Shown: piece after piece, positions 1,729-63,464 of the stretch
Numbering within the stretch: position 1 is the stretch's first letter
How the letters are laid out: each line of letters starts with the position of its first letter
Notes under the pieces: generated by a model
Database searches by the model: none
What the model saw: only the letters and a program-made list of their open reading frames with translations
What the model was told of the DNA's origin: nothing
Program-made: the position numbers and the translations under genes
IMG/VR virus record: IMGVR_UViG_3300047157_000197
Span: 211,971-275,970 of that record
Reading direction: 5' to 3' (one strand)
DNA: 64,000 nt

Positions 1729-1743
1729 TTTCGTATATTTGTA
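1710..1743 (+). promoter_or_regulatory. Bacteroidota sigma70-type promoter
   Basis: TTTG-N20-TATATTTG directly upstream of 1751. Confidence 0.7.
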
Positions 1744-1750
1744 AGTAGAT

Positions 1751-17829: not shown

Positions 17830-17840
17830 ACATAACTATA

Positions 17841-17848
17841 TATTTATA
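17841..17848 (+). promoter_or_regulatory. putative late-type promoter TA(T/C)TTATA (representative copy)
   Basis: Also at 17322, 18525, 20608, 21546, 22514, 30761, 32408, 61862, each shortly before a start codon and without the -33 box; TATTTATT variant at 8111. Confidence 0.5.
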
Positions 17849-18501: not shown

Positions 18502-18557
18502 ATAATTATTTACAAATACTTTTATACTTATATAGTATAGAACATTAAGGAATTAAT

Positions 18558-19163
18558 ATGAAATTATCAGAATTTAAAGAAGCAGTTAAAAATGTACTTA
18601 GAGAAAGAAGTATAAATGCTATCTCAAAACTACAACAAAGAAATATTGAGAATATTGCATCTGCATTAGAGTTCTACAAAAAGAACAAACATACCGATAA
18701 AAAAGAACCATTTATCAAATTACTTAAAAAACTAGGTAAAGAGAAAGCAGCTCTAGCAAAAGAACTTGATATGAAAGTTAGTGGTATGTACAAAAACGCA
18801 GAGTATAAAGGAGAATCAGTAAACGAAGGAAGTGATATATACATTAACAACAGAATTCAAATTACTAAATTTTCTGGTGGTAAAGACGGTAAACTGATTC
18901 AAATTAACGCACCAAAAATACAAGGTTCTGGTGACCATATTATTATGAAGATAGATGATTTTAAAAAAATGTTAAAAAAATCATCTAACTTATTAAAACA
19001 AGTACAAGAATCAGTAAACGAAGGACCATCTTCTGAAGAAAAAAGAATTGCAATGTTAGCAGTTAAGAAACAAGCTAAATACAGAAATGTAAGTTTATCT
19101 CAAGCAATTCAAGACCAAATAAATGCATTAGAAGAATTAAAAAGACAATATAAAGGAAAGTAG
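18558..19163 (+). CDS. modular hypothetical protein with ESVNE linkers (putative internal virion protein)
   Basis: MKLSEF...VLRE leader; two ESVNEG linkers. Confidence 0.6.
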   Translation: MKLSEFKEAVKNVLRERSINAISKLQQRNIENIASALEFYKKNKHTDKKEPFIKLLKKLGKEKAALAKELDMKVSGMYKNAEYKGESVNEGSDIYINNRIQITKFSGGKDGKLIQINAPKIQGSGDHIIMKIDDFKKMLKKSSNLLKQVQESVNEGPSSEEKRIAMLAVKKQAKYRNVSLSQAIQDQINALEELKRQYKGK

Positions 19164-19495
19164 TGATTAAACTAAAAAACATATTATCTGAAAGTAAAGT
19201 AGAATTAGGTAAAGTTTATTCTAATCCTTATGCAACTGCATTCAAACCACAAAATACGATTAAAGAAGAAGAGATAAAAGAAGATGACCATGAAGTAGGT
19301 ATGGGATTATCATCCTTAAAATCATCTGTTCGTTCCGCTAAAATCATATATACTAATATCAAAAAACGTAACATTGAAGATTTAGATGGTTGGGTTCAAG
19401 AGAAAATGACCTTAGCATCCGATTATCTTAAGAGTGTTGCTGATTACATGGAAGATTTAGACGAATACGATAAAGATGGAACAAATACTAACTAA
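19163..19495 (+). CDS. hypothetical protein with MIKLKNILSE leader
   Basis: GTG start; DHEVGM, LDGWVQEK module. Confidence 0.65.
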   Translation: MIKLKNILSESKVELGKVYSNPYATAFKPQNTIKEEEIKEDDHEVGMGLSSLKSSVRSAKIIYTNIKKRNIEDLDGWVQEKMTLASDYLKSVADYMEDLDEYDKDGTNTN

Positions 19496-19508
19496 TCATA
19501 ATCACATA

Positions 19509-20113
19509 ATGGAATTATTAGGAGCATTTTTAACCGGTGTAGTGGGACCAGTATTATATTTACTAATTAGTAGATATTTACAGAAACAAAAAGAAAAGAC
19601 TAGAGATATCGTAAAAGAAAATATTCAAGTGTTTCCTTAATTTCAAATGAACTTGAAGAAATCAGAGAAGAATTCAAAGGAGATAGAGTTTGGATTGCTC
19701 AGTTTCATAATGGTGGTAACTTCTACCCCACAGGTAAATCAATCCAAAAATTCTCAATATTCTATGAAGTAACCAAAATTGGTATATCTTCGGTATCTCA
19801 TACCTTTAATAATATACCTTGTTCACTTTACCCTAAAACATTTGAACATACAATGGATGGAAATAATATTTATATTCCAGATTTCAAAGACCCTAAAATT
19901 GCAACCTATGGATTAAAAGGAGCAGCAGAATCTGTTGGTACAAAATCTACATACTTAGTACCACTATTTACCTTAGATGATAAGTACATCGGAAACATAG
20001 GAATTGATTATGTTAGTAAGAAAAAGAAAATGACCAAAGATGATTGGGAACATTTCCAAATCAAAGCTGGTAGAATAGCAGGATATATTTCAAACCACTT
20101 ATCTGCTAACTAA
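19509..20113 (+). CDS. TM + GAF-like protein, holin-like candidate (one-base deletion near 19625)
   Basis: MELLGAF TM at 19509; adding one T at atattcaagt gives a continuous frame ...DRVWIAQFHNGG... into the 19853 ORF. Confidence 0.55.
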
Positions 20114-20154
20114 AATACCCTTATTTATACTCATTATAAACTACAAAAATAATC

Positions 20155-20207
20155 CACTTTTTATTAGGTTTTCTCGTTTATTTTCACTATATTTACTATG
20201 TAAATAA
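20155..20207 (+). promoter_or_regulatory. repeated promoter cassette (copy at 35584-35636)
   Basis: cactttttattagg-N7-gtttattttcactatatttactatgtaaataa in both. Confidence 0.8.
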
Positions 20208-20215
20208 TCTAAAGT

Positions 20216-20605
20216 ATGACTGAGAAAGAAGTCCAAAAAATAATCAACGAAGTTTATCCAAAGATAGAGAAACATTATGGTTACTCTAAATTTATATCAG
20301 AGTGTACTCCTTATGTAGAAACTCATTATAATATCTATGCTAGATATAGTGGTGAACCTGAAGCTAGAGGTGAACAAGATGATTGTCATGCTGAATTTGA
20401 TAGAACTGATAATAGTATTGTTATCTATTGGCCTAATATGAAAAATAGAAAACATATAATTCAAACTTTAGTTCACGAATACCAACATTACCTACAATCA
20501 CCATCTTGGTTCAAAAGATATTATGATATGGGATATGATTATGGTAATCATCCTTACGAAGTTCAAGCGTATGGTGAAGAAAAGAATTGGGTTCTTTTTA
20601 AATAA
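20216..20605 (+). CDS. small HExxH metallopeptidase-like protein
   Basis: TLVHEYQH...HPYEVQA. Confidence 0.7.
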   Translation: MTEKEVQKIINEVYPKIEKHYGYSKFISECTPYVETHYNIYARYSGEPEARGEQDDCHAEFDRTDNSIVIYWPNMKNRKHIIQTLVHEYQHYLQSPSWFKRYYDMGYDYGNHPYEVQAYGEEKNWVLFK

Positions 20606-20633
20606 TATATTTATACACAAATAGGAGAACATT

Positions 20634-20960
20634 ATGATAACATTAAAATCAATATTAGAAGATGCTAAAATCAATACAAAGATTGATGAAGCAAACGATA
20701 CATACTTTAAATCTTTTACAGATGCAGTAGAATTCGCTAGAAAAGCTACTGAAAAAAGAGGATTCACAATCGATGAAGATGATTGGCAATCTCAAATTGC
20801 TTTTGGTGGTAAGTATTCTCGTTCAAGGCCTTCTAAAGGTAAAACGAATTCATTTACAGTAGGGTTACTTAAAAAAGGTAAACCACAAAGAAAATCATTA
20901 CAAATCTCTGTATTTGGTATGGATAGTGGTTCTTATGAATTAACCCACTACATTAACTAA
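20634..20960 (+). CDS. hypothetical protein with MITLKSILE leader
   Basis: ORF track; GGAG and TATTTATA upstream. Confidence 0.7.
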   Translation: MITLKSILEDAKINTKIDEANDTYFKSFTDAVEFARKATEKRGFTIDEDDWQSQIAFGGKYSRSRPSKGKTNSFTVGLLKKGKPQRKSLQISVFGMDSGSYELTHYIN

Positions 20961-21506
20961 TGATTAAATTAAAAGATATGATAAGTAGAAGTTTATTTGT
21001 TGAATCAAAGAAACTCAGAGTTTTTGACTTTGATGATACTTTGGTTAAAACAACTTCGTTTATTTATATTACTAATGGTGATAAGAAAAAGAAACTTACA
21101 CCAGGTCAATATGCAGTTTACAATGAGAAGCCTGGTGATGAATTTGATTTCTCAGATTTCCAAAAAGTACAAGACCCAAAAGAAATTAAAAAGATAACTA
21201 AACGTTTTTCGTAGAATCGTAAAAAGTAGTGGTGGTGATGGAGTTCACATCCTAACTGCCAGAGCAGCATACAAACCGATAAGACAATATCTAAAAGATA
21301 TCGGTATTAACATGAGTAAAATATATGTAACCGCATTAGCATCTAACAATCCAAAAGATAAAGCAGATTGGATTGAAGATAAGATTGATAATGAAGGATA
21401 TGATGATGTATATTTTGCTGATGATTCCAAAAAGAACGTTGAAGCAACTAAAAAAATGTTAAGAAAAAAAAATATTAAGTTTAGAGTTCAACTGATAAAA
21501 CATTAA
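20960..21506 (+). CDS. HAD-family phosphatase with MIKLKD leader (one-base insertion near 21201)
   Basis: FDFDDTL, ILTAR, YFADD; removing one A joins the 20960 and 21312 ORFs. Confidence 0.75.
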
Positions 21507-21556
21507 GTTCGGTATGATTATTGAACTATATACTAAATAAATCTATATTTATAAAT

Positions 21557-22495: not shown

Positions 22496-22540
22496 TTAAT
22501 ATTAATTTCTTTATATTTATATAGGTAAAGGAAATACCAT

Positions 22541-24007
22541 ATGTCAAGATTAAAAAAAGAAATCCTAAATAAACTTAAAGAGTATGCCGGTAAGATGGGT
22601 AAAGACCATCTAGGTGGTGATGATATTGAATCCCCAAAAAAAGGTGGGTTAAGAGATTTTGATGGATACGATAACGTAGACTACAATCAAGATATGCCAA
22701 TGGATGAAATGCAGGTTGTAAACAAAGCAACAGGTAAAGATATTACCAAGCACGTTTTAGCTTTATTATCGGGTAAAATTGATAAGAAAAAGTTTGAAAA
22801 ACTTACTGGTCTAAAAAAAGAATCAGTAAACGAAGTTGGAGTAAATGTTTGGTATTTTTACAAAAAAGCTAACAAAAATAAGAATAAGTTTTTTAAGATG
22901 TTATCTGATTTTCGTAAAAAACATAGTGATACTGCATGGATAAAGATGTTAAATTATGCTCTTGAGGATTTTAATGAAAATCCAAAGAAGTATAAAACAA
23001 TTGATGATAAACAAAATATATTATTTAAAAACCTTCAAAACAATAAAAAAGTATATGAGGGTATGATGTCTACAATAGACCAAATCAGACAAGATTCAAA
23101 AGATGTTAGAGATTTCGTAAAGAACGTATTTAAGGATAGAGAATTTAAAAAGATGAGTAATGATAAAGATTTCATTAAGTATCTTAAATCTATCTATGAA
23201 GGTACTACAAATGAAGATGGTCATCCACAAAATTGGATGAGTGGTAGAACTTCTGATTACCATACTGCACTAAGAGGTAAGAATAAAGATTATAGTGGTG
23301 GTACTAACTTTAAAAAAAAGAATCATGGTCAACCAGATGTTGAAGAAGATGATGAGGACCAAGAAACTAACCATCTGAGTAATAAACAAACTCATATAAA
23401 ATCTCCATTAAAAATGGCAGAGAGTGGAAAAAAAAAATCCGATAAGAACTACAAAGATTGGAAAAGTAGTAGATTAAGAAAAGAAATATCTAAAAAACTT
23501 AAAGAATACGGTCAAAGATTAGATTTATCATTTATAGAAGATGAAGAAGCTAAGTTAGATGGAACATATCCATCAACTGATGCAATTGATAGAGATATTG
23601 ATGAAACTGCTAAAAGAGATTACAAAGATGAGTACAAGAAATTTCAATCATCAAAGAAATCAAAGAAATACAGAGCGGAATTAAATAAGTACAATAGACA
23701 AAAGGGTACTTATGGTAATGGTGATGGTAAAGATGCTTCACATAAAGGTGGGAAGATAGTAGGTTTTGAATCTGCATCTAAAAATCGTGGCAGAAAAGAA
23801 AAGAGTAGGTTAAAGAAAGAATCAATTACACTAGATGAAATCGGTATATTTCCTGTAAACAATTACCTTAAAGGTATGATTCCACGAAACATGATGGATA
23901 CTACAACAAGACAGAAAAAAGAAAGATTAAAATCAACTATAAATGATTTGAAAAGTACGTTAAATCATTTTTGGAAATCACATGATATACCATATAGGAT
24001 AAAATAA
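22541..24007 (+). CDS. modular protein with Glu-bounded segments, including an HNH-like module
   Basis: ESVNE, VYEG, IYEG junctions; KRDYKDEY...GDGKDASH...SKNR segment. Confidence 0.6.
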   Translation: MSRLKKEILNKLKEYAGKMGKDHLGGDDIESPKKGGLRDFDGYDNVDYNQDMPMDEMQVVNKATGKDITKHVLALLSGKIDKKKFEKLTGLKKESVNEVGVNVWYFYKKANKNKNKFFKMLSDFRKKHSDTAWIKMLNYALEDFNENPKKYKTIDDKQNILFKNLQNNKKVYEGMMSTIDQIRQDSKDVRDFVKNVFKDREFKKMSNDKDFIKYLKSIYEGTTNEDGHPQNWMSGRTSDYHTALRGKNKDYSGGTNFKKKNHGQPDVEEDDEDQETNHLSNKQTHIKSPLKMAESGKKKSDKNYKDWKSSRLRKEISKKLKEYGQRLDLSFIEDEEAKLDGTYPSTDAIDRDIDETAKRDYKDEYKKFQSSKKSKKYRAELNKYNRQKGTYGNGDGKDASHKGGKIVGFESASKNRGRKEKSRLKKESITLDEIGIFPVNNYLKGMIPRNMMDTTTRQKKERLKSTINDLKSTLNHFWKSHDIPYRIK

Positions 24008-24009
24008 TA

Positions 24010-24330
24010 ATGATAAAACTTACATCTATACTTAACGAAGGAAAGATATTATTACAATCTAAAGATAAGAATGCTGAATTACCATCAGTATTTCCTGATT
24101 TTTTAGTACACGCTAAAGAACATAATGTAATACAATTTATTCCAAGAAAATCAGTTGATTTAGATAAAATAGACCAATTGGGTAATATATCAAAAGATGA
24201 TATCACTAAACAATTAGCTAGTTGGGCTGAAAAGAAAACAAAAATCAAATATAAACCATTTAACGATTTCCAAGGAGCAGGATATGGAATTCGTATAGAT
24301 ATGGATTACATTGGAAAAAAACTTAAATAA
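24010..24330 (+). CDS. hypothetical protein with MIKLTSILNE leader
   Basis: ORF track. Confidence 0.65.
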   Translation: MIKLTSILNEGKILLQSKDKNAELPSVFPDFLVHAKEHNVIQFIPRKSVDLDKIDQLGNISKDDITKQLASWAEKKTKIKYKPFNDFQGAGYGIRIDMDYIGKKLK

Positions 24331-24340
24331 GGAGAATCAA

Positions 24341-24829
24341 ATGGCAATAGTACCAAAAGGAATCGTAGTACATAGTATGGGTGAGTATCTTCAATGGGAA
24401 GGTGAATGGATAACAGCTCATGAATTTTTAAAAGAATTGAAACTCTCAGTTCATGGATTTATACATCCTGATGGTAAATATGAAAAGATGATTTCATCAC
24501 CTGGTAAAGCATCTCATGCTGGTAAATCAGAATGGAATGGATTACAACATTTAAACTCACATTATTTAGGATTTGAATTGTTAGTACCTGGTAAACAAAC
24601 GTATGGTTCGTTTTTAAAGGCAATAGAACAAGAAGGTACTTATACTGAAGAACAATTTAAATCATCAGTAGATACAGTAAAATGGTGGATGAAAGAATAT
24701 AATATCCCTGCAGAAAATGTAGTAAGACATTCTGATTGTAGTGGAGACCATGTAAGAGGAAGTGGAAAAGGAAAAGTAGACCCTGGCTCTGCATTTGATT
24801 GGGAACGATTTAAGAAAGAAATTTCATAA
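24341..24829 (+). CDS. N-acetylmuramoyl-L-alanine amidase (Amidase_2), candidate endolysin
   Basis: VVHS, SHAG, GFE, RHSD, KVDPG; start 24341 after AAGGAG. Confidence 0.85.
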   Translation: MAIVPKGIVVHSMGEYLQWEGEWITAHEFLKELKLSVHGFIHPDGKYEKMISSPGKASHAGKSEWNGLQHLNSHYLGFELLVPGKQTYGSFLKAIEQEGTYTEEQFKSSVDTVKWWMKEYNIPAENVVRHSDCSGDHVRGSGKGKVDPGSAFDWERFKKEIS

Positions 24830-24886
24830 ATTTTTATATATATAAGTAATAAAGGTTACAACTCACATTTAAGGAGGAGTAATACA

Positions 24887-25217
24887 ATGATTGATAAAGA
24901 ATTAGAGAAAGCAAATACCAGTCATCCAGCAGATACAAACGGTGATGGTAAAGTATCTAAAGAAGAACACGATATGTATCTTGAATTCAAGAGAAAAGAA
25001 CTTGAAGATAAAGATGCTATGAGAGATGCACAACGTAGAATGGCATGGTTTGCCTTAATTGGTATGTTACTATATCCATTCGCAGTTGTAATCGCTTCAG
25101 TAAGTGGTGTGGAACAAGCATCAACTATACTTGGTGATATGGCAAGCTACATATTTTGTTTCAGTTGCAGCAATAGTTGCAGCATTCTTTGGTACACAAG
25201 CGTACTCAAGTAAATAA
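24887..25217 (+). CDS. EF-hand + 2-TM holin-like membrane protein (one-base insertion near 25144)
   Basis: DTNGDGKVSKEE; removing one A restores ATYFVSVAAIVAAFFGTQAYSSK*; next to the amidase. Confidence 0.55.
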
Positions 25218-25236
25218 AGTTATAAAATTATAAAAA

Positions 25237-26007
25237 TTGGATAGATTTAAAAAAATACCACCTCTTGATATGAGTGAGTGGTTTGTTACAGAAAAAGAAA
25301 AGGACACCTTTCATCCTAATGATTGGAATATGCCAGTGCCTTGGATATCCTCATTTATTTTTACACATATAAAATCTGAATTTTGGGGTTATGGAAACGA
25401 CCAAGAATGGGATTATAAGCATAGACCAAAAGTTTTACAAATTGGTTGTGCTCAAGGATGGGATGCCATTGAAAATGCCAAAATACTTAAATTGCCTTCA
25501 ATAAATGGAGAGCTTCATATTATTGACTGGTTCAAAGGTAATTTAACTGTTGATACAGAAGAAGAATGGTATTATAATGAAAATAACCCACCAGAATGGA
25601 AATCCCACTTATGGAGTGAGGCAAAAAAATTCAAAGTAGATGATATTATAACAGTATTTGAAGGCGATTCAAGAAAAATGATTCATAATGTTATGGATAA
25701 TTGGTATGATATTATTTTTATTGACGGTGGTCATGAATATGATATCGTAAAATCAGATGTTGAAAATGGTTATAGAAAATTAAAAAAAGGTGGTATTATG
25801 GTTTTTGATGATTTTTCAGGAGATGAAACTACCTATGATGAATTAAATATCAAAGATGCATCTGAAGAAATGTTAGAAAAAGATACTTGGGAATTTGAAT
25901 CACATGGTTTGGTTCATGTTGGTGTTATAAAAGCAGTACATGAATTTTTAAAAGGAGATTATATTTCTGTTCCATGTCATCATAAATGCTATCACATTAA
26001 AAAATAA
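25237..26007 (+). CDS. class I SAM methyltransferase (Methyltransf_24-like)
   Basis: QIGCAQG, GDS, IFIDGGHEY, GGIMVFDD. Confidence 0.85.
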   Translation: MDRFKKIPPLDMSEWFVTEKEKDTFHPNDWNMPVPWISSFIFTHIKSEFWGYGNDQEWDYKHRPKVLQIGCAQGWDAIENAKILKLPSINGELHIIDWFKGNLTVDTEEEWYYNENNPPEWKSHLWSEAKKFKVDDIITVFEGDSRKMIHNVMDNWYDIIFIDGGHEYDIVKSDVENGYRKLKKGGIMVFDDFSGDETTYDELNIKDASEEMLEKDTWEFESHGLVHVGVIKAVHEFLKGDYISVPCHHKCYHIKK

Positions 26008-26016
26008 AATAAAGTT

Positions 26017-26490
26017 ATGATATATTGGTTCACAGGACAACCTGCAGCAGGAAAAACTATTTTAGGTAAAAAATTAATTGAGTTTCTTAAAACAGAAAAG
26101 AGAAATTGGAGAAGAACAGTCTTTCATTTAGATGGAGATGATTTAAGAGAACTAACTGTTAATAAAGATTATACCCCAAAGGGTAGAGAAATCAATATAA
26201 GAAATGCTCAGATGATTACAGAATTTCTTCATAAGAATGGGTGTGATGTAGTTGTTTCACTTGTAGCACCTCCAAGATGGTTACGAGAAGAATTCAAAGA
26301 AAGAATAGGTTTAGAAAACTTTCAAGAATTTTATGTACATTGTTCAGACCCTCGTGAAAGAGACCACTTTCATAGTAAGAATTACGAAGCACCTCAAGAT
26401 AACTTCATCGATGTTGATACAACAAAACATTCACCCGAAAAATCATTTTCAAAGATTATAAATACGCTGAAAAAGTTAAATAGATTATAA
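26017..26490 (+). CDS. cysC: adenylylsulfate (APS) kinase
   Basis: WFTGQPAAGKT, LDGDDLR, YEAP. Confidence 0.8.
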   Translation: MIYWFTGQPAAGKTILGKKLIEFLKTEKRNWRRTVFHLDGDDLRELTVNKDYTPKGREINIRNAQMITEFLHKNGCDVVVSLVAPPRWLREEFKERIGLENFQEFYVHCSDPRERDHFHSKNYEAPQDNFIDVDTTKHSPEKSFSKIINTLKKLNRL

Positions 26491-27533
26491 TGATTGATAA
26501 AAAAGAATATATCTGTTCAATGCCGTTTCAATATACAGAGGTATTTGATGACAGACAATATCTTTGTTGTCCCTCTTGGTTAGATGTGGATGTGTGGGAT
26601 GGAAAATCAATAAAATCTAGTTTTAATAGTGATAAGTCAAAAGAAGTTAGAGAATCTATTTTAGATGGTTCTTACAAATATTGCAATGAAACACAATGTC
26701 CATATTTATCAGGTCTAAAAAATAATAACTTATCAAAGAAATTTATAAAAAAAGATAAAAAAATTATAAACAACCTAAGAAGTAACGTTGAAATAAAAAC
26801 AGTTAATTTTTGTTTTGATAGAAGTTGTAATTTTCAATGTCCATCTTGTAGAAATGAATTAATAAACTACTATGGAAAAGATAGAGAACAAGTTGAAGTA
26901 AAACTTAAAGAAATTACAGATGAGATATCATCAACTGTAAAAATATTATATCTCACAGGAACTGCAGACCCATTTTACTCTAAATCATTTAGAGAGTTTT
27001 TAGAAAAATTAGATTCTACCAAATTTAAAAAATTAGAATCAATTCATTTACATACTAATGGAAGTTTATGGAATGAAAAAATGTGGAATAGATTAAGTGC
27101 AATACATCCTTATGTAAAAACTTGTGAAATATCAATAGATGCTGGAACAAAAAAAACCTATGAAACTAAAACAAGAATCGGTGGTAAGTGGGATGTGTTG
27201 TTAGAAAATTTAAAGTTTATCACCACAATAGATACTATACAATTCTTTAGTTTTTCATTTGTAGTACAAGACAGTAATTTTAGAGAAATGAAACTATTCT
27301 ATGATATAATAACTAATTGTATGAAAGGAAGTAAATCTAAATTTGATGTATTTTATAATTCAATAACAAATTGGGGTACTTATAGTGAAGAAGAATATAA
27401 TGAAAAAAATGTTACAAATTCAAATCATAAAGACCATAGCGAGTTTTTGGAAGTATTAAAAACAATGAAAGATTTACCTTTCTTTACAAATAATTTTAAT
27501 CACTTATATGAAAAAACAATAAGTTTAATATAA
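26490..27533 (+). CDS. radical SAM enzyme with N-terminal SPASM/twitch-like Cys cluster
   Basis: CNFQCPSC; N-terminal C..P, CC, C...CP. Confidence 0.85.
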   Translation: MIDKKEYICSMPFQYTEVFDDRQYLCCPSWLDVDVWDGKSIKSSFNSDKSKEVRESILDGSYKYCNETQCPYLSGLKNNNLSKKFIKKDKKIINNLRSNVEIKTVNFCFDRSCNFQCPSCRNELINYYGKDREQVEVKLKEITDEISSTVKILYLTGTADPFYSKSFREFLEKLDSTKFKKLESIHLHTNGSLWNEKMWNRLSAIHPYVKTCEISIDAGTKKTYETKTRIGGKWDVLLENLKFITTIDTIQFFSFSFVVQDSNFREMKLFYDIITNCMKGSKSKFDVFYNSITNWGTYSEEEYNEKNVTNSNHKDHSEFLEVLKTMKDLPFFTNNFNHLYEKTISLI

Positions 27534-27934
27534 TGGCAAATATAAAAACAAAAGCAGATAAAGAATCTTCCTCATCAGAAGTAAAGTATTCATTCTTTGC
27601 AGGTAGATGGCAACCACTTCACAAGGGGCATCTATGGTTAATTAATGAAAGATTAAAAGAAGGATATAAAGTATGGTTAGGTATCAGAGATGTAGAACCA
27701 GATGAAAAGAATCCTTGGACTGCAGAAGAAATTCTAAAAATGGTTCATGAAGGTGAGTTAAAAGAACTCATCTTAGAGGGTAAGGTAATTGCAACCATTA
27801 TACCTGATATCGAATCTATCAACTATGGTAGAGGAGTAGGATATGATATCATAGAGCACGTACCACCAAAAGAGATTGGGGATATTTCAGCAACATCTAT
27901 TCGTAATCAAATGAAAAAAGATGGTAAGCTATGA
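27533..27934 (+). CDS. HIGH-family nucleotidyltransferase
   Basis: GRWQPLHKGH, ISATSIR. Confidence 0.8.
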   Translation: MANIKTKADKESSSSEVKYSFFAGRWQPLHKGHLWLINERLKEGYKVWLGIRDVEPDEKNPWTAEEILKMVHEGELKELILEGKVIATIIPDIESINYGRGVGYDIIEHVPPKEIGDISATSIRNQMKKDGKL

Positions 27935-28419
27935 TTTTGTTTCAAGAAAAACTTATAGATGATATAGAAATAAAATACCTTCTTAATCTTTGGGATACTA
28001 ATTTAGTTCAAGATAATACTAAATTTTTAGATGAATATAAAGCACTAGCAATGGAATGGGTTGATGTAATTAAAAATAAGTTAGATATAAGTAGCTTGCA
28101 CAACGGAGGGTTTCATAATAAAAATTTTGAAAAAATAAGAATACAACATTATCACGAATCCATTGGTAATATAGAAACATACCATGGTCATGTCAATATT
28201 CATAATTATATTATATTTTTGAATGATGATTTTAAAGGTGGCGAATTAGAATTTGAAAATGGAATAATCATTAAACCATCAAAGGGAAGTTTAGTATATT
28301 TCAATAATAATGAAAGACATAGAGTTCTACCTTGTATCGGAAGTAGATATGTATTTACTGCATTAGGAAATACAGAAGCAAATATAGAATTTAAATCTAA
28401 AGAAAAAAGTATTATATAA
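27931..28419 (+). CDS. 2OG-Fe(II) oxygenase-like protein
   Basis: FLNDDFKGGEL, H..., GSRY; first ligand motif atypical (HxH/HxN). Confidence 0.65.
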   Translation: MILFQEKLIDDIEIKYLLNLWDTNLVQDNTKFLDEYKALAMEWVDVIKNKLDISSLHNGGFHNKNFEKIRIQHYHESIGNIETYHGHVNIHNYIIFLNDDFKGGELEFENGIIIKPSKGSLVYFNNNERHRVLPCIGSRYVFTALGNTEANIEFKSKEKSII

Positions 28420-28420
28420 T

Positions 28421-28615
28421 ATGGCATCAATAAAAGAAACTTTTATCAAAACTATTATTTGGAGAGTAATTGCTACTTCAATAACATTTTTAGTTAGTTG
28501 GGTTATAAGCGGTAACTTAGAGTTTGGATTAATGATAGGTGGTATAGATACAATAATAAAAACAATCGGGTATTTTACATATGAAAGATTATGGAATACT
28601 AAAAAAACAAAATAA
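28421..28615 (+). CDS. DUF2061-like small membrane protein
   Basis: KTIIWR...YERLW. Confidence 0.75.
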   Translation: MASIKETFIKTIIWRVIATSITFLVSWVISGNLEFGLMIGGIDTIIKTIGYFTYERLWNTKKTK

Positions 28616-28616
28616 A

Positions 28617-29645
28617 ATGATAAAACCAAATGTAAAAAATGAATGGGGTGATTTAAAAGAAATCATTGTAGGAAGTGCAATAAATGCACAAGTACCAACT
28701 GTTGGGGATAAATGTTTACATAATATTGATTATGCACACCTATCTGATGAAGAATTTAAAAACAGACCAAGTGGATTATATCCTCAAAAACTGATAGATG
28801 AAACTGAAGAAGATTTAGATGGAATTTCAGACCAACTTAGAGAACTTGGAGTAAAGGTTCACAGACCATTAGAAAGAGATTTTTCACAACCTATAAAAAC
28901 AGATAATTGGGAAGTTGATGGTTATTATAACTATTGCCCAAGAGATTCTATGTTAGTTATCAACGATAAAGTTATTGCAACACCAATGACTCTTAGACAT
29001 AGAAGTAATGAAGCAGAAACTTGTAAACCATTATTTGACCCAACACATTGGGTAGATGCTCCAAAACCAAAATTATTAGATTCAATCTATCAAAGAGAAG
29101 ATTTATCTATTCCAACGTTACTTGATGGTGAACCTGTTTTTGATGCAGCAAATGTTATTAAACATAATAATGATTTACTATATTTAGTTTCTAATACAGG
29201 TAATAAGACTGGTGCAGAGTGGTTAGAAAGATATTGTAAAGAAAACTTTGGTGAAGAATATAATGTACATTTAGCACAAGGTGTTTATGCATACATTCAT
29301 ATTGATACAACTTTTGTATTTGTAGGAGAAGGTAAGGTACTTTTAAATCCAACAAGAGTTAATGAATTCAATATACCAGAATTTTTAAAACCTTTTGATA
29401 AGATATGGGCACCCGAACCATTTCCTACTCAAGTACTTGATAATTGGTGTCCTGCTTCACCATGGTTGGGAATGAATATTTTACCAATCAATGATAAGTT
29501 AATAATGGTTGAAGAACACCAAACTCTACTAATGAAAGAATTAAAAAGATTTGGAATAGATACAATACCTGTAAGAATGAGACATGCTAGAACTTTTAGT
29601 GGTGGACCTCATTGTGTAACCTTAGATGTAGTTAGAGGTGAGTAA
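28617..29645 (+). CDS. amidinotransferase (glycine/inosamine-phosphate amidinotransferase family)
   Basis: NEW..LKEIIVG, CPRD, FDAA, HID, GGPHC; start 28617. Confidence 0.88.
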   Translation: MIKPNVKNEWGDLKEIIVGSAINAQVPTVGDKCLHNIDYAHLSDEEFKNRPSGLYPQKLIDETEEDLDGISDQLRELGVKVHRPLERDFSQPIKTDNWEVDGYYNYCPRDSMLVINDKVIATPMTLRHRSNEAETCKPLFDPTHWVDAPKPKLLDSIYQREDLSIPTLLDGEPVFDAANVIKHNNDLLYLVSNTGNKTGAEWLERYCKENFGEEYNVHLAQGVYAYIHIDTTFVFVGEGKVLLNPTRVNEFNIPEFLKPFDKIWAPEPFPTQVLDNWCPASPWLGMNILPINDKLIMVEEHQTLLMKELKRFGIDTIPVRMRHARTFSGGPHCVTLDVVRGE

Positions 29646-30723
29646 GCGTATATTAGATTTTCATCACCAAGCTAATAGATTATTTGGAAGATTTCTTGAT
29701 ATCAACGATTATAGAGATTCAGCCAATGGTGTTTATGATGCTATAATTGCACATAGACAAATTGAAGAAGATGGTGAAATTGAAGAACTTATTAAATATT
29801 GTAAAAAAACTACAAGAGTAATAGTAGATATAACAACCGAATCTGGTCAAATAGAACTTTTTATTGATAGATTTAATAAAATTATAAATAAACATCCATA
29901 TAAATTCATTTTAATTTCAGATGTACCTATTAATAAAGTAGTAAATTGTAAAGTGATAGATGATTATTCACTTGCATTTACATCTCATTTAAATGATTCA
30001 ATGGTTGGTAGAGTATATCATCATCCAACAGGTGCAAAATTGCAACATGGACTTGATAGTTATAATGGTTCTTTAAGAATACAAAGATTATGGTTAAATT
30101 ACTTTTTTATTACAAAATTCAGAAGAGATGTATTACCATTGAACGTTGAGTTTAATCATTATGTAAATTTAGGCGAAGGTCCACAATTTTATCAAGAACA
30201 ATTTGAAAATTTACTTAAAGAATTACCCACAACTGAAAGAAATGAAATACTTCATAATAAACAATATATAAACCCACCTGGAAAAGATATTGATATTGCA
30301 CATTTCAATGATTTAAAACACCATTGTAACACCGTAAACGTTGTAAGTGAAAACACAATAGGTAATGATATGAATAAAAACGATGATTCCTTTCATATAA
30401 CTTTCACAGAAAAAACAATTAAACCATTTGTAAGAGGACAGATACCGTTAATACATAGTTATGTAGGATTGCAATCTAAATTAAGAGAATTAGGATTTGA
30501 TTTATACGATGAATTTGTAAACCATTCATATGAAAATGAATCAGATTCAGTAAAAAGACTTGAAATGATTGTAGATGAGGGTAAACGATTAATGTACTTA
30601 GATACTGAAAATTATTTAAGAGAAAATCAAAGTAGAGTTTACAAGAATAAAAAATTATGTGAGTATTTGGTATGGCAAGGTAAAACCATGGTACATGATA
30701 TAATAGATAATATTAATATTTAA
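29638..30723 (+). CDS. GT10-like (fucosyltransferase-like) protein
   Basis: NVVSE, FTEKTIKPF, LRELGF, HSYE. Confidence 0.5.
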   Translation: MSKRILDFHHQANRLFGRFLDINDYRDSANGVYDAIIAHRQIEEDGEIEELIKYCKKTTRVIVDITTESGQIELFIDRFNKIINKHPYKFILISDVPINKVVNCKVIDDYSLAFTSHLNDSMVGRVYHHPTGAKLQHGLDSYNGSLRIQRLWLNYFFITKFRRDVLPLNVEFNHYVNLGEGPQFYQEQFENLLKELPTTERNEILHNKQYINPPGKDIDIAHFNDLKHHCNTVNVVSENTIGNDMNKNDDSFHITFTEKTIKPFVRGQIPLIHSYVGLQSKLRELGFDLYDEFVNHSYENESDSVKRLEMIVDEGKRLMYLDTENYLRENQSRVYKNKKLCEYLVWQGKTMVHDIIDNINI

Positions 30724-30783
30724 AAATTAGAAAAGCCTATCAAAAAATTTTAATATACTATACTTATATTAAAGAGGATTACT

Positions 30784-31347
30784 ATGGAAAATAAAAAAGA
30801 AAAAATATTCCCTAATTATGACCCAACTCAAGATTTATCTTTAGCTGGTAAAAATCGAAGAATGAAACGAGGATTAGGTGCAAAACCACTTCTCGAATCA
30901 GAGATAAAGGAAGTTCAAAAGAAAGCTCGTTCAGCAATGGAAGCAGCTAGATTATTGGGAGTATCTTACAACACTTATAAAAAATACGCAAGAAAATATG
31001 GTATCTTTGAAGATTTAAAGAACCCTGATGGAACTGGTATTCGTAAAGGATATAATATCAAACGAGGAAAATACTCTTTAGATGATATTTTAAAAGGGAA
31101 ATATCCTGATTACCCTGTTTGGAAACTTAAACAAAGATTACTCAATAATGGTTATATGTTAGAAAAATGTAACAAATGTGGATTTGAAGAAAGAAGAATC
31201 ACAGACCATAAAGTTCCACTTGTTTTAGATTTTCTTGATGGAGATAGAAAGAATCATAATTATGAAAATTTAAGAATGTTATGTTTTAATTGTTCCTTTC
31301 TAATTAATGGAAATTTATCAGGCCCTAAAAAAGAATACGAATATTAG
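30784..31347 (+). CDS. HTH + degenerate HNH-like zinc-finger protein
   Basis: AARLLGVSYNT; CNKC...LDFLDGD..N...NLRMLCFNC with the usual His residues missing. Confidence 0.65.
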   Translation: MENKKEKIFPNYDPTQDLSLAGKNRRMKRGLGAKPLLESEIKEVQKKARSAMEAARLLGVSYNTYKKYARKYGIFEDLKNPDGTGIRKGYNIKRGKYSLDDILKGKYPDYPVWKLKQRLLNNGYMLEKCNKCGFEERRITDHKVPLVLDFLDGDRKNHNYENLRMLCFNCSFLINGNLSGPKKEYEY

Positions 31348-31377
31348 GATAATTAAATAATTTTTTGTATATTTGTA
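31344..31377 (+). promoter_or_regulatory. Bacteroidota sigma70-type promoter
   Basis: TTAG-N20-TATATTTG. Confidence 0.7.
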
Positions 31378-31390
31378 GAAATAAATAAAT

Positions 31391-31714
31391 ATGAGTTACA
31401 TAATCGGTGATAAGTGTGTAAGTGTATGTGATACTGCATGTGTTAAAGTATGTCCTGTTAATTGCATACATGGTCCTATTGATATTGAGGGAGCAGGAAA
31501 TGAAGTTGATAATATGTCACCTGAGGAATTAAAAGGAAAACAACTATATATTAATCCAGAAGAATGTATTTTATGTGGTGCATGCGTACCTGAATGTCCT
31601 CCAGATGCTATTTACTATGATGAAGATGATACAATTAAAGCAGAAGGTAATGCTGAATCTGTGAAAAAAAACTATGAATTTTTTGGATTCGAATTTGGAA
31701 AAGATAAATTTTAA
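31391..31714 (+). CDS. dicluster ferredoxin
   Basis: CVSVCDTACVKVCP and CILCGACVPECP. Confidence 0.9.
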   Translation: MSYIIGDKCVSVCDTACVKVCPVNCIHGPIDIEGAGNEVDNMSPEELKGKQLYINPEECILCGACVPECPPDAIYYDEDDTIKAEGNAESVKKNYEFFGFEFGKDKF

Positions 31715-31720
31715 AAAAAA

Positions 31721-31752
31721 TTAGGAAATTAAACAAATTTTTCGTATCTTTA
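31721..31752 (+). promoter_or_regulatory. Bacteroidota sigma70-type promoter
   Basis: TTAG-N20-TATCTTTA. Confidence 0.65.
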
Positions 31753-31790
31753 TACGATAAATACATATATATAAATATAAAACAGAAATT

Positions 31791-32003
31791 ATGAGTAAAT
31801 TTTTCGAAGTTACAGTAGAAGTGGTTGTTGCCACACTTAAAAATGGTAAAGACAAAAAAGTAAAAGAAATCTACTTAGTAGATGCACAATCAGTAACAGA
31901 AGCTGAAGCAAGAACCGTAAAGGATTTTGAACAAAGTGGAGTTCAGATTGACTACAAAGTAAGTGGAGCAAAAGAAAGTAGAGTACTAAGAGTAATTGAG
32001 TAA
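31791..32003 (+). CDS. DUF4494-like protein
   Basis: KEIYLVDAQSVTEAEAR; Bacteroidota-associated family. Confidence 0.75.
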   Translation: MSKFFEVTVEVVVATLKNGKDKKVKEIYLVDAQSVTEAEARTVKDFEQSGVQIDYKVSGAKESRVLRVIE

Positions 32004-32269
32004 TGAGTAAAGAACCTCAAATACAAAAAGAAGAAGTTAAAACAAAAGTTGCAAAGAGAGTACCACCTGGAGATAGGTGGACTCCTCTTTCCAACTCTAC
32101 CGTAATGTTGGATTCTTTAACTGATGTACTTGAATTTATTTATCAAGATACAGGTAAAACACAATTTTATATGGATGCTAAAGAAGGATTTGTATATGTT
32201 GTTGATACTGAAGAAGTGGTGATAGAACCAGAACCAACAAAAAGATGGAGTTTATACGGTGAAGAATAG
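32003..32269 (+). CDS. hypothetical protein
   Basis: ORF track; RVPPGDRW. Confidence 0.65.
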   Translation: MSKEPQIQKEEVKTKVAKRVPPGDRWTPLSNSTVMLDSLTDVLEFIYQDTGKTQFYMDAKEGFVYVVDTEEVVIEPEPTKRWSLYGEE

Positions 32270-32469
32270 AACAAAAAAATTTATACTAAAGTTAGTGTTT
32301 TTATATGCTACATTATTTCCCTCATCAGGTCTTATAACAGAACTACATGATTATAGTTCTAAAAAAGCAGAAGATACCGATGAGCATATGTTTATTTAAA
32401 AGTACTATATTTATAGTAGTGATGTAATATATCACAAAATCAATTAATTAATTAAAAAATAAAAAAATC

Positions 32470-32781
32470 ATGCAAAACATTTTAATTATTTTAGCTATCC
32501 TTGCAATAGGAGCTGCAGTTTATTATTTCGGATTCTACAAACAAGGTAAAATCAACGATAGAGATGGGGATTTTATTCCTGATGAAATCGAAGATGCAGT
32601 AGAAGATGTAAAGAAAGTTGCTAAAACTGTAAAAAGAAGAGCTAAAAGAGTAAAAGAAGAACTTGGTGATGTTGCAGATGCAATTAAAGAGGTTGGTAAA
32701 CAATCTAAAGATGTTGTAAAAGCAGCAAAAGGAAAACCAAGAGCAGGTAGAAAACCTAGAGCTTCTAAGAAAAAGAAATAA
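32470..32781 (+). CDS. single-TM protein with coiled coil and basic tail
   Basis: TM, DRDGDFIPD. Confidence 0.7.
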   Translation: MQNILIILAILAIGAAVYYFGFYKQGKINDRDGDFIPDEIEDAVEDVKKVAKTVKRRAKRVKEELGDVADAIKEVGKQSKDVVKAAKGKPRAGRKPRASKKKK

Positions 32782-32793
32782 GGAGTACTATTT

Positions 32794-33612
32794 ATGAGTT
32801 TAAAATCATTGATTACCGAAACAGTATTAATTGATTCAATGTATGACATCGAATCTGAATTACTGAATATAAAAGAAGCTTTATTAGAACAAATGATTAT
32901 CGAGGGCGTTGATGACCCTGGAATACTTAAATGTGTTTTCATGGCAGGAGGACCTGGTTCAGGTAAATCCTATACTGCCATGGAGATTTTCGGTATTGAT
33001 AAAAGATTAAAACAATCCTTTGCAATGACTGGTCTTAAATCAGTTAATTCAGATTCAGCATTTGAAAAAGGATTAAAGGATAATGGTATTGACCCAAAGA
33101 ACTTAGCAAAAATTGAAAAAGAAGATGCTGAACTTTGGGATAAAATTTCTAATAATGATGACTCTATTAGAAATAATGCAAAACGATTAACTCAACTTCA
33201 AAAGAAATTTTATGAAGCTGGTAGATTGGGTATGATTATCGATGGTACTGGTCATGTATATAGTAAAATTCAAAAGAATAAGAAATATGCAGAATCACTT
33301 GGTTACGATACCTACATGATATTTGTAAATACTTCACTTGAAGTAGCACAAGAACGAAACTTAAATAGAGAAAGAGTTTTAGATGCTGACCGATTAGAAA
33401 AATCTTGGAAAGATGTTCAGAACAACTTGGGTAAGTTCCAAAACTTATTCGGTGGTAACTTTAGGATAGTAGATAATACAGTTTATAAACCTATCGGAAA
33501 ACAAGTACAGAAAGCAGTAAATGCTTTTGTAAGAAAGAAAGTGTATAATCCAATCGGAAAGAAATGGATTCAAACTGCAAGAGCACTTAAAAACAAAAAC
33601 TTCATTAAATAA
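32794..33612 (+). CDS. zeta-toxin/AAA_33-like P-loop kinase with MSLKSLITE leader
   Basis: GGPGSGKS, NSD, IIDGTG, RN..R.R. Confidence 0.8.
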   Translation: MSLKSLITETVLIDSMYDIESELLNIKEALLEQMIIEGVDDPGILKCVFMAGGPGSGKSYTAMEIFGIDKRLKQSFAMTGLKSVNSDSAFEKGLKDNGIDPKNLAKIEKEDAELWDKISNNDDSIRNNAKRLTQLQKKFYEAGRLGMIIDGTGHVYSKIQKNKKYAESLGYDTYMIFVNTSLEVAQERNLNRERVLDADRLEKSWKDVQNNLGKFQNLFGGNFRIVDNTVYKPIGKQVQKAVNAFVRKKVYNPIGKKWIQTARALKNKNFIK

Positions 33613-42633: not shown

Positions 42634-44262
<1,629 letters not shown>

Positions 44263-52217: not shown

Positions 52218-52219
52218 AG

Positions 52220-60880: not shown

Positions 60881-60884
60881 TAGA

Positions 60885-63079: not shown

Positions 63080-63082
63080 AAC

Positions 63083-63415: not shown

Positions 63416-63426
63416 TTCTAATTTTA

Positions 63427-63458: not shown

Positions 63459-63464
63459 CCCCTG

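What the first reader, a model, noticed from the sequence alone, without database searches (positions are those of the whole stretch)
18558..33612. Shared N-terminal leader on unrelated proteins: candidate capsid-targeting sequence
Seen: MIKLKNILSE (19163), MITLKSILE (20634), MIKLKDMISRSLFVE (20960), MIKLTSILNE (24010), MSLKSLITE (32794), and looser MKLSEF..VLRE (18558) and MSRLKKEILNKLKE (22541). They sit on different cargo, including a HAD phosphatase and a zeta-like kinase, mostly downstream of TA(T/C)TTATA. Known: T4 internal proteins carry a roughly 10-aa targeting leader that is removed after Glu by the gp21 prohead protease. Inference: a packaging tag for enzymes injected with the DNA.
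Basis: partly seen in the sequence, partly recalled or inferred. Interest (0 to 1): 0.72.

Follow-up and report, generated by a model that had tools for sequence, protein, structure and literature searches.

The report
Capsid-targeting leader on phage cargo proteins
At least nine otherwise unrelated proteins of a 276-kb T4-like marine phage share a ten-residue N-terminal tag that closely resembles phage T4's capsid-targeting sequence, so it probably marks proteins that are loaded into the head, trimmed by the head protease and delivered with the DNA.

Summary
The window is the last 64 kb of a 275,970-bp T4-like virus record that encodes a gp21-type prohead protease, a T4-type portal, an acidic scaffold and a gp23 capsid protein. 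The leader M-I-K-L-[KT]-x-[ILM]-[ILM]-x-E heads five genes in the window. It also heads four genes outside it, three of them right beside the portal and protease genes. It occurs only at N-termini, is conserved as peptide but not as DNA, and sits on unrelated cargo. It matches the functional positions of the T4 capsid-targeting sequence MKTYQEFIAE (hydrophobic 4, 7 and 8; Glu 10) and ends in the gp21 cleavage motif L/I-x-E. The leader genes lie in operons behind a candidate late promoter, TATAYTTATA, that is shared with head and tail genes. Relatives keep the leader while the cargo varies. HAD orthologues with different N-terminal extensions all keep a hydrophobic-x-E just before the domain. 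A second feature emerged: an internal E-S-V-N-E linker, encoded by one identical 16-nt DNA sequence, bounds segments that sit in different genes in different genomes. Packaging, cleavage and injection are inferred, not shown. I rate it a new variant of a known system.

The parts
17839..17848 (+). Candidate late promoter TATATTTATA in front of a PAP2 phosphatase gene (17854-18501)
   Evidence: 10-mer: 34 forward, 2 reverse in the genome; 9 found against 2.6 expected in the window; Pfam PAP2
18523..18532 (+). Candidate late promoter TATACTTATA in front of gene 18558
18558..19163 (+). 201-aa protein with the loose leader MKLSEFKEAVKNVLRE. Two E-S-V-N-E linkers (18813-18827 and 19008-19022) split it into three segments
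   Evidence: Metatranscriptome contigs diverge exactly at 18813 and after 19027
19163..19495 (+). 110-aa leader protein. Leader MIKLKNILSE at 19163-19192; GTG start overlaps the preceding stop codon
   Evidence: The family keeps the leader (A8)
20606..20615 (+). Candidate late promoter TATATTTATA followed by an AGGAG ribosome-binding site
20634..20960 (+). 108-aa leader protein (MITLKSILED). The gene is an indel cassette, absent from a contig of run X4
   Evidence: joint 20630->20952 skipping 321 nt
20960..21506 (+). HAD-motif phosphatase gene with leader MIKLKDMISRSLFVE (20960-21004). It is broken here by one extra base at 21199-21203 and is intact in relatives
   Evidence: frames; intact gene of about 177 aa in relatives; all laid contigs of X1, X4 and X16 lack one base there
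22512..22521 (+). Candidate late promoter TATATTTATA in front of gene 22541
22541..24007 (+). 488-aa protein with loose leader MSRLKKEILNKLKE and one E-S-V-N-E linker (22820-22834). Its segment MQVVNK...KKESVNE sits inside relatives of the 19163 gene in other genomes
24010..24330 (+). 106-aa leader protein (MIKLTSILNE, 24010-24039). Indel cassette, followed by an Amidase_2 gene (24311-24829)
   Evidence: joint 24007->24341
32406..32415 (+). Candidate late promoter TATATTTATA in front of the 32470-32781 and 32794 gene pair
32794..33612 (+). 272-aa P-loop kinase (Zeta_toxin/AAA_33) with the 9-residue leader MSLKSLITE (32794-32820)
   Evidence: Pfam, PHROGs, orthologues keep MS[LI]K..[LI]TE, fold matches to zeta toxin, PezT and bacterial polynucleotide kinase from a low-confidence model

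Best explanation
The leader is this phage lineage's version of the T4 capsid-targeting sequence. Shown: the genome is T4-like and encodes a gp21-family serine protease, a T4-type portal, an acidic scaffold and a gp23 capsid protein. Shown: at least nine proteins that are unrelated beyond residue 10 start with M-I-K-L-[KT]-x-[ILM]-[ILM]-x-E. Shown: their genes lie in the head module or in an island of operons behind a promoter-like motif shared with structural genes. Inferred: late in infection the short amphipathic leader (hydrophobic residues at 4, 7 and 8) holds the protein on the scaffolding core while the shell closes around it. The prohead protease then cuts after the Glu of hydrophobic-x-E and frees the mature protein. 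The mature protein stays inside with the DNA and enters the next cell on injection. The cargo includes a zeta/PNK-like kinase and a HAD-motif phosphatase. It also includes a 1,735-aa protein with NMNAT-like, HD and CCA-adding domains, and several small proteins of unknown function. A second set of head-module and island proteins carries internal E-S-V-N-E sites of the same kind. These proteins would be cut into pieces of 40-100 residues. Segments bounded by that linker sit in different genes in different genomes.
For: Protease, capsid protein, portal and scaffold are present. In an alignment with T4 gp21 the His85 and Ser140 columns are invariant, and the N-terminus is MANLLIE against T4's MNEPQLLIE. 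The leader occurs only at N-termini: 5 of 353 starts, 0 of 88,208 internal positions; DNA pattern 5 forward, 0 reverse, 0 control. It is a peptide-level feature on unrelated proteins. The T4 sequence is MKTYQEFIAE (PMC8442874). In T4, targeting depends on residues 4 and 7, processing on 8 and 10, and gp21 cuts after L/I-x-E (PMC9026906). Here L4 is invariant, 7 and 8 are hydrophobic and 10 is Glu. Leader genes flank the portal and protease genes, much as T4 core proteins gp67 (MEGLIE) and gp22 (MLKEQLIAE) do. The motif TATAYTTATA (34 forward, 2 reverse) lies upstream of head and tail genes and of the window's leader operons. Relatives keep the leader. The gene after the protease is 133, 291, 409 or 604 aa with a conserved leader and C-terminal domain. 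A 287-kb relative carries MITLKSIIEE, MIKLKNLIKE and MIKLTNIIKE. Orthologues of the 1,735-aa protein keep MN[EK]LS[KQ][FY]LVE although their domain make-up varies. HAD orthologues carry ..LFTE..LLTE..SINE or ..PIQE directly before the domain. Distant kinase homologues often start with similar leaders, for example MIKLEDILGE and MIKLVDLLKE. The cultured Flavobacterium phage immuto has its own analogous leader set in its head module, such as MKKSQLRQIIKE and MKKLIRIVE. All nine in-frame E-S-V-N-E sites lie in head-module or island proteins.
Against: There is no protein-level evidence: no virion proteome, no neo-N-termini, no cultured host. Hydrophobic-x-E near an N-terminus is low in information and also occurs where cleavage is not expected, for example the terminase MAKQSLKE. 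The late timing of the promoter motif is inferred from the genes it precedes, and it differs from T4's TATAAATA. Metatranscriptome contigs cover the genes but do not prove transcription. The protease-substrate complex prediction gave no answer. Some leaders deviate: one is 9 residues, one is a 15-residue version, and two are loose. A 200-kDa cargo protein is large for ejection. The HAD gene is frameshifted in this assembly.
Confidence: 0.7

Rival explanations
1. The leader is a protease-removed propeptide of prohead core or scaffold components. These are built into the prohead, then degraded and expelled, and are never delivered to the next host. On this reading the tag marks assembly proteins, not injected enzymes.
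For: Three leader genes lie between terminase and scaffold, beside the protease. T4 core proteins gp67 and gp22 also start with hydrophobic-x-E leaders and are degraded. Proteins with several E-S-V-N-E sites look like substrates that are chopped into pieces.
Against: A kinase, a HAD phosphatase and a 1,735-aa nucleotidyltransferase/HD protein have no obvious role in assembly. They carry a single N-terminal site, like T4 internal proteins and Alt, which are retained and injected. The two readings can both hold, for different members.
Confidence: 0.15
2. The shared N-terminus is a gene-expression or general folding feature. It could be A/T-rich early codons (ATG ATT AAA) that favour translation initiation. 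Or it could be a generic amphipathic helix for membrane association or oligomerisation, unrelated to the capsid.
For: Seven other genes start with MIK or MIN without the rest of the motif, so the first codons are common in this 30% G+C genome.
Against: L4, the hydrophobic pair at 7-8 and Glu 10 are conserved through synonymous and conservative changes. The motif is confined to head-module and promoter-linked genes. The same hydrophobic-x-E persists before the HAD domain even when it lies far from the start codon. The leader has no hydrophobic core of signal-peptide type, while ordinary signal and lipoprotein peptides occur elsewhere in the genome.
Confidence: 0.08
3. The leader keeps harmful enzymes, such as the zeta-like kinase, inactive in the producing cell. 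It would act as a degron or inhibitory propeptide without any targeting role.
For: The cargo includes a zeta-toxin-like kinase. The leader ends in a protease site.
Against: The same leader is on small non-enzymatic proteins and on proteins in the head module. In T4 the ten residues suffice for targeting. This role is compatible with targeting and not exclusive of it.
Confidence: 0.05
4. The similarity is chance or a remnant of paralogy, with no function.
For: None beyond the shortness of the motif.
Against: (N-terminal only, controls zero), conservation across hundreds of related contigs, and no similarity beyond the leader.
Confidence: 0.02

Closest known systems
[quoted passage not shown]
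   Same: An N-terminal leader of about 10 residues on proteins that are otherwise unrelated. Hydrophobic residues at 4, 7 and 8 and Glu at 10 (T4 MKTYQEFIAE, here MIKLKNILSE). It ends in L/I-x-E. The same genome encodes a homologous Peptidase_S77 protease, a T4-type portal, a scaffold and a gp23 capsid protein.
   Different: The consensus sequence differs. There are at least nine carriers rather than three. The cargo includes large enzymes and is not homologous to T4 internal proteins (no such family). The lineage is distant: capsid protein under 40% identical to enterobacterial T4-likes, nearest cultured relatives about 51-53%. Nothing is shown biochemically here.
T4 Alt ADP-ribosyltransferase (a packaged, injected enzyme processed by gp21)
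   Same: An enzyme, not a small basic protein, that carries a gp21-cleaved propeptide and is delivered with the DNA (PMC9026906).
   Different: Alt is cut at both ends. The enzymes here belong to other families: a zeta/PNK-like kinase, a HAD phosphatase, and a protein with NMNAT-like, HD and CCA-adding domains.
Polymorphic internal-protein loci of T-even phages
   Same: A diverse, exchangeable set of cargo proteins that share only the targeting sequence (PMC3012670). Here leader genes come and go as whole cassettes between near-identical genomes, and the gene after the protease ranges from 133 to 604 aa.
   Different: Here exchange also happens inside genes, at an E-S-V-N-E linker whose DNA is identical in every copy. 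I did not find this described for T-even phages in the papers I searched.
Propeptide processing of head and ejection proteins in phiKZ, 201phi2-1 and SPN3US
   Same: Many head proteins are cut after Glu at a three-residue motif by a diverged gp21 homologue. Propeptides hold several sites, and much of the cargo is ejected.
   Different: Their motif is S/A-x-E and no shared N-terminal leader is reported. Here P3 is hydrophobic as in T4, and the leader has a clear consensus.

Membership tests
T4-type capsid-targeting sequence / gp21-processed head cargo | Short (10-19 residue) propeptide at the extreme N-terminus of proteins that are otherwise unrelated | tested here: met
   Nine proteins; no similarity beyond residue 10; motif only at N-termini
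T4-type capsid-targeting sequence / gp21-processed head cargo | Propeptide ends in the gp21 cleavage motif L/I-x-E | tested here: met
   ILSE, SILE, LFVE, ILNE, LITE, LLNE, LLQE, LMNE, FLVE; motif definition from PMC9026906. P3 is L, I, M or F.
T4-type capsid-targeting sequence / gp21-processed head cargo | Hydrophobic residues at leader positions 4 and 7 (the targeting determinants of IPIII) | tested here: met
   L4 is invariant in the eight leaders with Ile or Asn at position 2, and position 7 is I, L, M or F. T4 has Y4 and F7. The 9-residue MSLKSLITE is shifted by one residue.
T4-type capsid-targeting sequence / gp21-processed head cargo | gp21-family prohead protease encoded by the same genome | tested here: met
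   Peptidase_S77, 91 bits against a cut-off of 27; T4 His85 and Ser140 columns invariant
T4-type capsid-targeting sequence / gp21-processed head cargo | T4-type head: gp20 portal, gp22-like scaffold core, gp23 capsid protein | tested here: met
   Portal_T4 at 2.5e-69, Gp23 at 2.7e-76, a 385-aa acidic scaffold-like protein upstream of the capsid gene (no Pfam match, assigned by position and composition)
T4-type capsid-targeting sequence / gp21-processed head cargo | Made late, together with head proteins | tested here: inconclusive
   A promoter-like 10-mer is shared with structural genes. RNA-library contigs cover the genes, but that does not prove transcription or timing.
T4-type capsid-targeting sequence / gp21-processed head cargo | Leader cut off after Glu, and mature protein present in DNA-filled heads | not testable with these tools
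   Needs virion mass spectrometry or N-terminal sequencing. The complex prediction gave no answer.
T4-type capsid-targeting sequence / gp21-processed head cargo | Cargo ejected into the host with the DNA | not testable with these tools
   Needs infection experiments
Zeta toxin / AAA_33 P-loop kinases (cargo at 32794) | Walker A P-loop and a family profile match over the curated cut-off | tested here: met
   GGPGSGKS; Zeta_toxin 29.7 bits (cut-off 22.3) and AAA_33 30.3 bits (cut-off 27). Fold matches to zeta toxin, PezT and bacterial PNK come from a low-confidence model (pLDDT 60). Substrate unknown.
HAD phosphatases (cargo at 20960) | Motif I DxDxT, motif II Thr/Ser, motif IV acidic pair, and a family profile match | tested here: inconclusive
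   FDFDDT, HILTAR and FADDS are readable. The only profile match is below the cut-off (DUF2608, 19.4 bits against 22.6). The gene is frameshifted in this assembly.
Sec or lipoprotein signal peptide (considered for the leader) | Hydrophobic core of about 7 or more residues followed by a signal-peptidase site | tested here: not met
   The leader alternates charged and hydrophobic residues and ends in Glu. True signal and lipoprotein peptides elsewhere in the genome look different.

The most novel reading that the evidence does not exclude
The head cargo of this abundant marine phage lineage is organised as an in-frame cassette system. Small protein segments are strung together behind a targeting leader. 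They are separated by one fixed 16-nt linker (GAATCAGTAAACGAAG, reading E-S-V-N-E). That linker would serve both as the prohead-protease cut site and as the recombination junction that moves segments between genes and genomes. If so, the phage can reshuffle what it injects, including enzymes that could repair RNA or restore NAD, without disturbing packaging or processing. The leader plus the linker would then be a sequence signature for finding injected proteins in uncultured phages.
Probability: 0.3. Interest if true: 0.8.

Novelty: new variant of a known kind. Interest (0 to 1): 0.6.

Why it matters
Proteins injected with phage DNA act before any phage gene is expressed, so they are prime candidates for countering host defences. 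They are almost impossible to recognise from sequence in uncultured phages. A targeting leader that can be read from the genome would help here, and it seems to have kept the T4 logic across a very distant and environmentally abundant branch of T4-like phages. The protease has more than 550 related stretches in IMG/VR, and the kinase more than 7,800 homologues. Such a leader gives a direct list of candidate injected proteins to test. It also suggests that capsid targeting of the T4 type is ancient. The linker-bounded segments add a possible mechanism for rapid turnover of that cargo.

Tried and rejected
- Megablast of the region against 50,697 phage records found nothing.
- A shuffle test of pairwise N-terminal similarity could not be run because the Python machine was lost. 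Regex counts and DNA-pattern controls stand in for it.
- The complex prediction of protease with the 24010 protein gave no answer and is not used as evidence.
- The AlphaFold model of the kinase was weak (pLDDT 60). Its fold matches only place it among zeta, PNK and adenylate-type P-loop kinases.
- The conserved 466-aa C-terminal domain of the 1,735-aa protein could not be identified. It had no PDB sequence match, no named Atlas cluster and an unusable model (pLDDT 39.5). A KTDG motif there hints at a ligase-like nucleotidyltransferase but is untested.
- I first read the capsid protein N-terminus MANFDLSKLME as a leader cut at Glu 11 and dropped that. The Gp23 profile match starts near residue 72, and the first 60 residues hold five hydrophobic-x-E motifs. 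A longer propeptide, as in T4, is therefore more likely.
- The joint 18987->22796 between two linker regions has only 21 letters on one side and is not used.
- Literature searches found no report of such leaders outside enterobacterial T4-like phages in the held library. That is not proof that none exists.

Full report
**What the window is.** The window is bases 211,971-275,970 of a single 275,970-bp IMG/VR virus record. The record has 30.5% G+C, and about 343 of 353 open reading frames are on the + strand. Nothing close is in the phage collection at the DNA level. The genome is T4-like. It holds a Peptidase_S77 (gp21-type) prohead protease at genome 111,608-112,201 and a Gp23 major capsid protein at 118,449-120,056. 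It also holds a Portal_T4 protein, a large terminase and a 385-aa acidic scaffold-like protein. By capsid protein, the nearest records are an uncultured 484-kb phage (57% identity), Microcystis phage Mel-JY01 (53%), Flavobacterium phage vB_FspM_immuto (51%) and Rhodothermus phage RM378 (39%). It is therefore a distant branch of the T4 superfamily. It is abundant in seawater. More than 550 IMG/VR stretches encode a relative of its protease. Many seawater metagenomes and metatranscriptomes hold the region.

**The observation.** The five clear ones are:

| Window start | Leader | Length |
|---|---|---|
| 19163 (GTG start) | MIKLKNILSE | 110 aa |
| 20634 | MITLKSILED | 108 aa |
| 20960 | MIKLKDMISRSLFVE | 84-aa piece of a HAD gene |
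| 24010 | MIKLTSILNE | 106 aa |
| 32794 | MSLKSLITE | 272 aa |

Reading the N-termini of the whole genome showed four more outside the window:

| Genome start | Leader | Protein and place |
|---|---|---|
| 106533 | MISLKNLLNE | 129 aa, between terminase and portal |
| 112390 | MIKLTDLLQE | 604 aa, one small gene after the protease |
| 114215 | MIKLTQLMNE | 250 aa, next gene |
| 98306 | MNKLSKFLVE | 1,735 aa, upstream of the terminase |

- The regex MI[KTS]L[KTS].[ILMF][ILM].E hits 5 of 353 ORF starts and none of 88,208 internal positions.
- A back-translated DNA pattern gives 5 forward, 0 reverse and 0 control matches in the genome. A second pattern gives 4 gene starts and 1 antisense chance hit.
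- The proteins share nothing after about residue 10.
- The leader codons differ at synonymous sites and the upstream DNA is unrelated. The conserved thing is therefore the peptide, not a duplicated piece of DNA.

**Comparison with T4.**
- The T4 capsid-targeting sequence is MKTYQEFIAE (PMC8442874).
- In T4 the first ten residues of IPIII suffice for packaging. Targeting depends mainly on residues 4 and 7 and processing on residues 8 and 10. gp21 cuts after Glu in L/I-x-E (PMC9026906).
- The leaders here have an invariant Leu at 4, a hydrophobic pair at 7-8 and Glu at 10.
- The protease aligns with T4 gp21 with the His85 and Ser140 columns invariant. That these two are the catalytic residues is from my memory of the T4 literature. 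The alignment also shows the same N-terminal LLIE: T4 MNEPQLLIE, here MANLLIE.
- T4 core proteins gp67 (MEGLIE) and gp22 (MLKEQLIAE) also begin with such motifs.
- Several head-module proteins here do too: MSMEQNLNKFLEE, MKITREALKNIVKE, MEEMLINE, MRLQNIIDE, and the scaffold-like protein MANSNLLKE.

**Expression context.**
- Aligning the intergenic hits gave a longer motif, TATAYTTATA(T).
- That 10-mer occurs 34 times forward and twice in reverse in the genome. In the window it occurs 9 times against 2.6 +/- 1.6 expected, and none of 100 shuffles reaches 9.
- It sits 15-40 nt upstream of head and tail genes. Seven of its eight + strand copies in the window lie between 17.8 and 32.4 kb.
- Genes 18558, 20634 and 22541 follow it directly. 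Genes 19163, 20960 and 24010 are coupled downstream genes, and 32794 is the second gene behind the copy at 32406.
- The 1,735-aa gene and the 129-aa gene in the head module also follow it.
- I read it as a late promoter, by association only.

**Relatives.**
- In contigs whose protease is 95-98% identical, the gene after the protease keeps the leader MIKLTDLL[KQ]E. It also keeps a C-terminal domain of about 120 aa (phrog_1987, which starts after ..IINE). The gene is nevertheless 133, 291 or 604 aa long.
- In a 287-kb relative with 83% protease identity, the corresponding leaders are MKLKNLLNE, MIRLSKIVNE and MIKLTNIIKE. Two more leader genes lie elsewhere in that genome.
- Orthologues of the 1,735-aa protein range from 974 to 1,853 aa with changing domain content but keep MN[EK]LS[KQ][FY]LVE. 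In some, residue 13 is Leu rather than Met, so the first ATG is the true start.
- Kinase orthologues keep MS[LI]K..[LI]TE.
- Among representatives of the kinase family clustered at 50% identity, many start with similar leaders, such as MIKLEDILGE, MIKLVDLLKE, MKITKEALLQLIRE and MKVTKRQLQKIIAE. Others have none.
- The most telling case is the HAD protein. Its orthologues carry MIKLKDMI[AS]RSLF[TV]E, MFIKEQEDMIARSLFTE, MLKLVDLLTE, or a long unrelated N-terminal region ending ..SINE or ..PIQE. In every case a hydrophobic-x-E stands directly before the conserved KKLRVFDFDD.
- Phage immuto has a different but analogous leader set in its head module: MKKSQLRQIIKE, MKKSQIVKAVQEVLEE, MKKLIRIVE and MKKQILSE.

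**Cargo.**
- 32794 is a P-loop kinase: Zeta_toxin and AAA_33 over their cut-offs and phrog_12810. A low-confidence model is nearest to zeta toxin, PezT and bacterial polynucleotide kinase.
- 20960 has HAD motifs I, II and IV, but only a sub-threshold profile match. It is frameshifted in this assembly at 21199-21203. Every laid contig from two DNA runs and one RNA run lacks one base there. Relatives have an intact gene of about 177 aa. The break is therefore peculiar to this assembly.
- The 1,735-aa protein has three recognisable parts. The first is a cytidylyltransferase-like domain with weak, sub-threshold matches to NMN adenylyltransferases. The others are an HD/HDIG domain and a CCA-adding/poly(A) polymerase head domain. 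Its conserved 466-aa C-terminal domain could not be identified.
- The other carriers have no known function.

**A second feature.**
- Nine in-frame E-S-V-N-E sites occur in the genome. Four are in a 515-aa head-module protein and two in a 343-aa one. Two are in the 18558 protein and one in the 22541 protein.
- Eight of the nine read GA[AT]TCAGTAAACGAA and one has TCG for the Ser codon. The flanking sequences are unrelated.
- The exact 15-mer occurs, always on the + strand, in 49 of the 164 loci fetched by then.
- Segments bounded by the linker sit in different genes in different genomes. One segment of our 515-aa protein lies in the homologue of the 343-aa protein in L011. The segment MQVVNK...KKESVNE of our 22541 protein lies inside homologues of the 19163 protein.
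- RNA-library contigs leave our sequence exactly at 18813 and after 19027, and continue into a segment of the 250-aa protein.
- In a comparison with the 287-kb relative, homology begins exactly at the linker.
- Whole leader genes are also present or absent as units: joints 20630->20952 and 24007->24341.
- The linker fits the same protease motif, with Val at P3. I read these proteins as strings of small head proteins that the protease cuts apart, with the fixed linker DNA acting as the junction for exchange. This part is inference.

**Verdict.** The capsid-targeting reading is supported by all the sequence-level tests available. Cleavage, packaging and injection remain to be shown. Some carriers may be core components that are degraded rather than delivered. 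The system is homologous in logic and machinery to T4's. It differs in consensus, in the number and kind of cargo proteins, and in the linker-bounded segments, so I rate it a new variant of a known kind.

Noticed in passing
window 62861-63685 (genome 274831-275656) against genome 884-1708: The first genes of the record are repeated near its end with small differences (MRDMRDIKKL.. against MTDMRDIKKL..). That points to a direct terminal repeat or a circularly permuted assembly, although IMG/VR lists the record as linear without end repeats.
   Followed up: no
window 18813-18827, 19008-19022, 22820-22834; L003 11821-11835, 12466-12480, 12673-12687, 12886-12900, 17414-17428, 17702-17716: The E-S-V-N-E linker is encoded by the same codons in all nine copies, with one synonymous exception. 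It includes the rarer Asn codon AAC, which peptide selection alone would not fix. The linker marks the breakpoints of segment exchange between genes.
   Followed up: partly
window 21199-21203: This assembly has one extra base relative to every laid contig of three public runs, and it breaks the HAD gene. This is an assembly error or a rare variant, not a general pseudogene.
   Followed up: yes
genome 9940-9956, 28153-28169, 165421-165437; window 1734-1750: A different upstream motif, TCGTATATTT(G/A), precedes several non-structural genes. It fits the Bacteroidota -7 promoter element TAnnTTTG as I recall it. Many signal peptides end in ..FAQ or ..GQ, as in Bacteroidota. This hints at a Bacteroidota host, in line with the Flavobacterium phage relative.
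   Followed up: no
genome 24-26 kb and 171-173 kb; window about 35.9-38.2 kb and 49.4 kb: A third upstream motif, A(A/C)CTTAAAA(C/T), lies directly before many small genes. It may be a middle-class promoter or a translation signal.
   Followed up: no
window 33766-34767 and 51414-61610: About nine paralogous genes start with G(D/C/T)S-type motifs, for example IFTGCSYTFGEG, CIGTSFTEGSG, LLGDSWIEGQG and FLGDSFTWGQG. They resemble SGNH/GDSL hydrolases, but none of the four tested matches a Pfam family at E 0.001.
   Followed up: partly
window 42646-44262: A phage-encoded Cpn60/GroEL chaperonin (Pfam 4.6e-73). A GroES-like N-terminus (MKQFKPLGDRVLIKP) lies at genome 208749.
   Followed up: partly
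window 39461-40132 and 47041-48402: Two N6_N4 DNA methylase genes have nearly identical N-termini (MKLLLGD.[VI]DKLKELDDNS[IV]DSIV). The shorter one matches only the first part of the profile.
   Followed up: no
window 24887-30723: A cluster of modification or biosynthesis genes lies between the two leader-gene groups: a methyltransferase, an APS-kinase-like protein, a radical SAM enzyme, a cytidylyltransferase-like protein and a weak arginine-deiminase-like match.
   Followed up: no
proteins P0339, P0350, P0360, P0362 and P0363 (relatives, not in the window): In some relatives the 19163-type protein and the kinase are fused behind a different N-terminal module, MSWS.KYKKSIDCSNPKGFSQKAHC... In those fusions the former leader is internal and has lost its Glu. 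This may be a second, alternative N-terminal module for the same cargo.
   Followed up: no
L131 and L138 (relatives), and window 19193-19250: The motif GK[IV]YSNP[FY]..AFK follows the leader of the 19163 protein. In other large phage contigs it recurs just upstream of the HAD domain. It is a small conserved element of unknown role.
   Followed up: no
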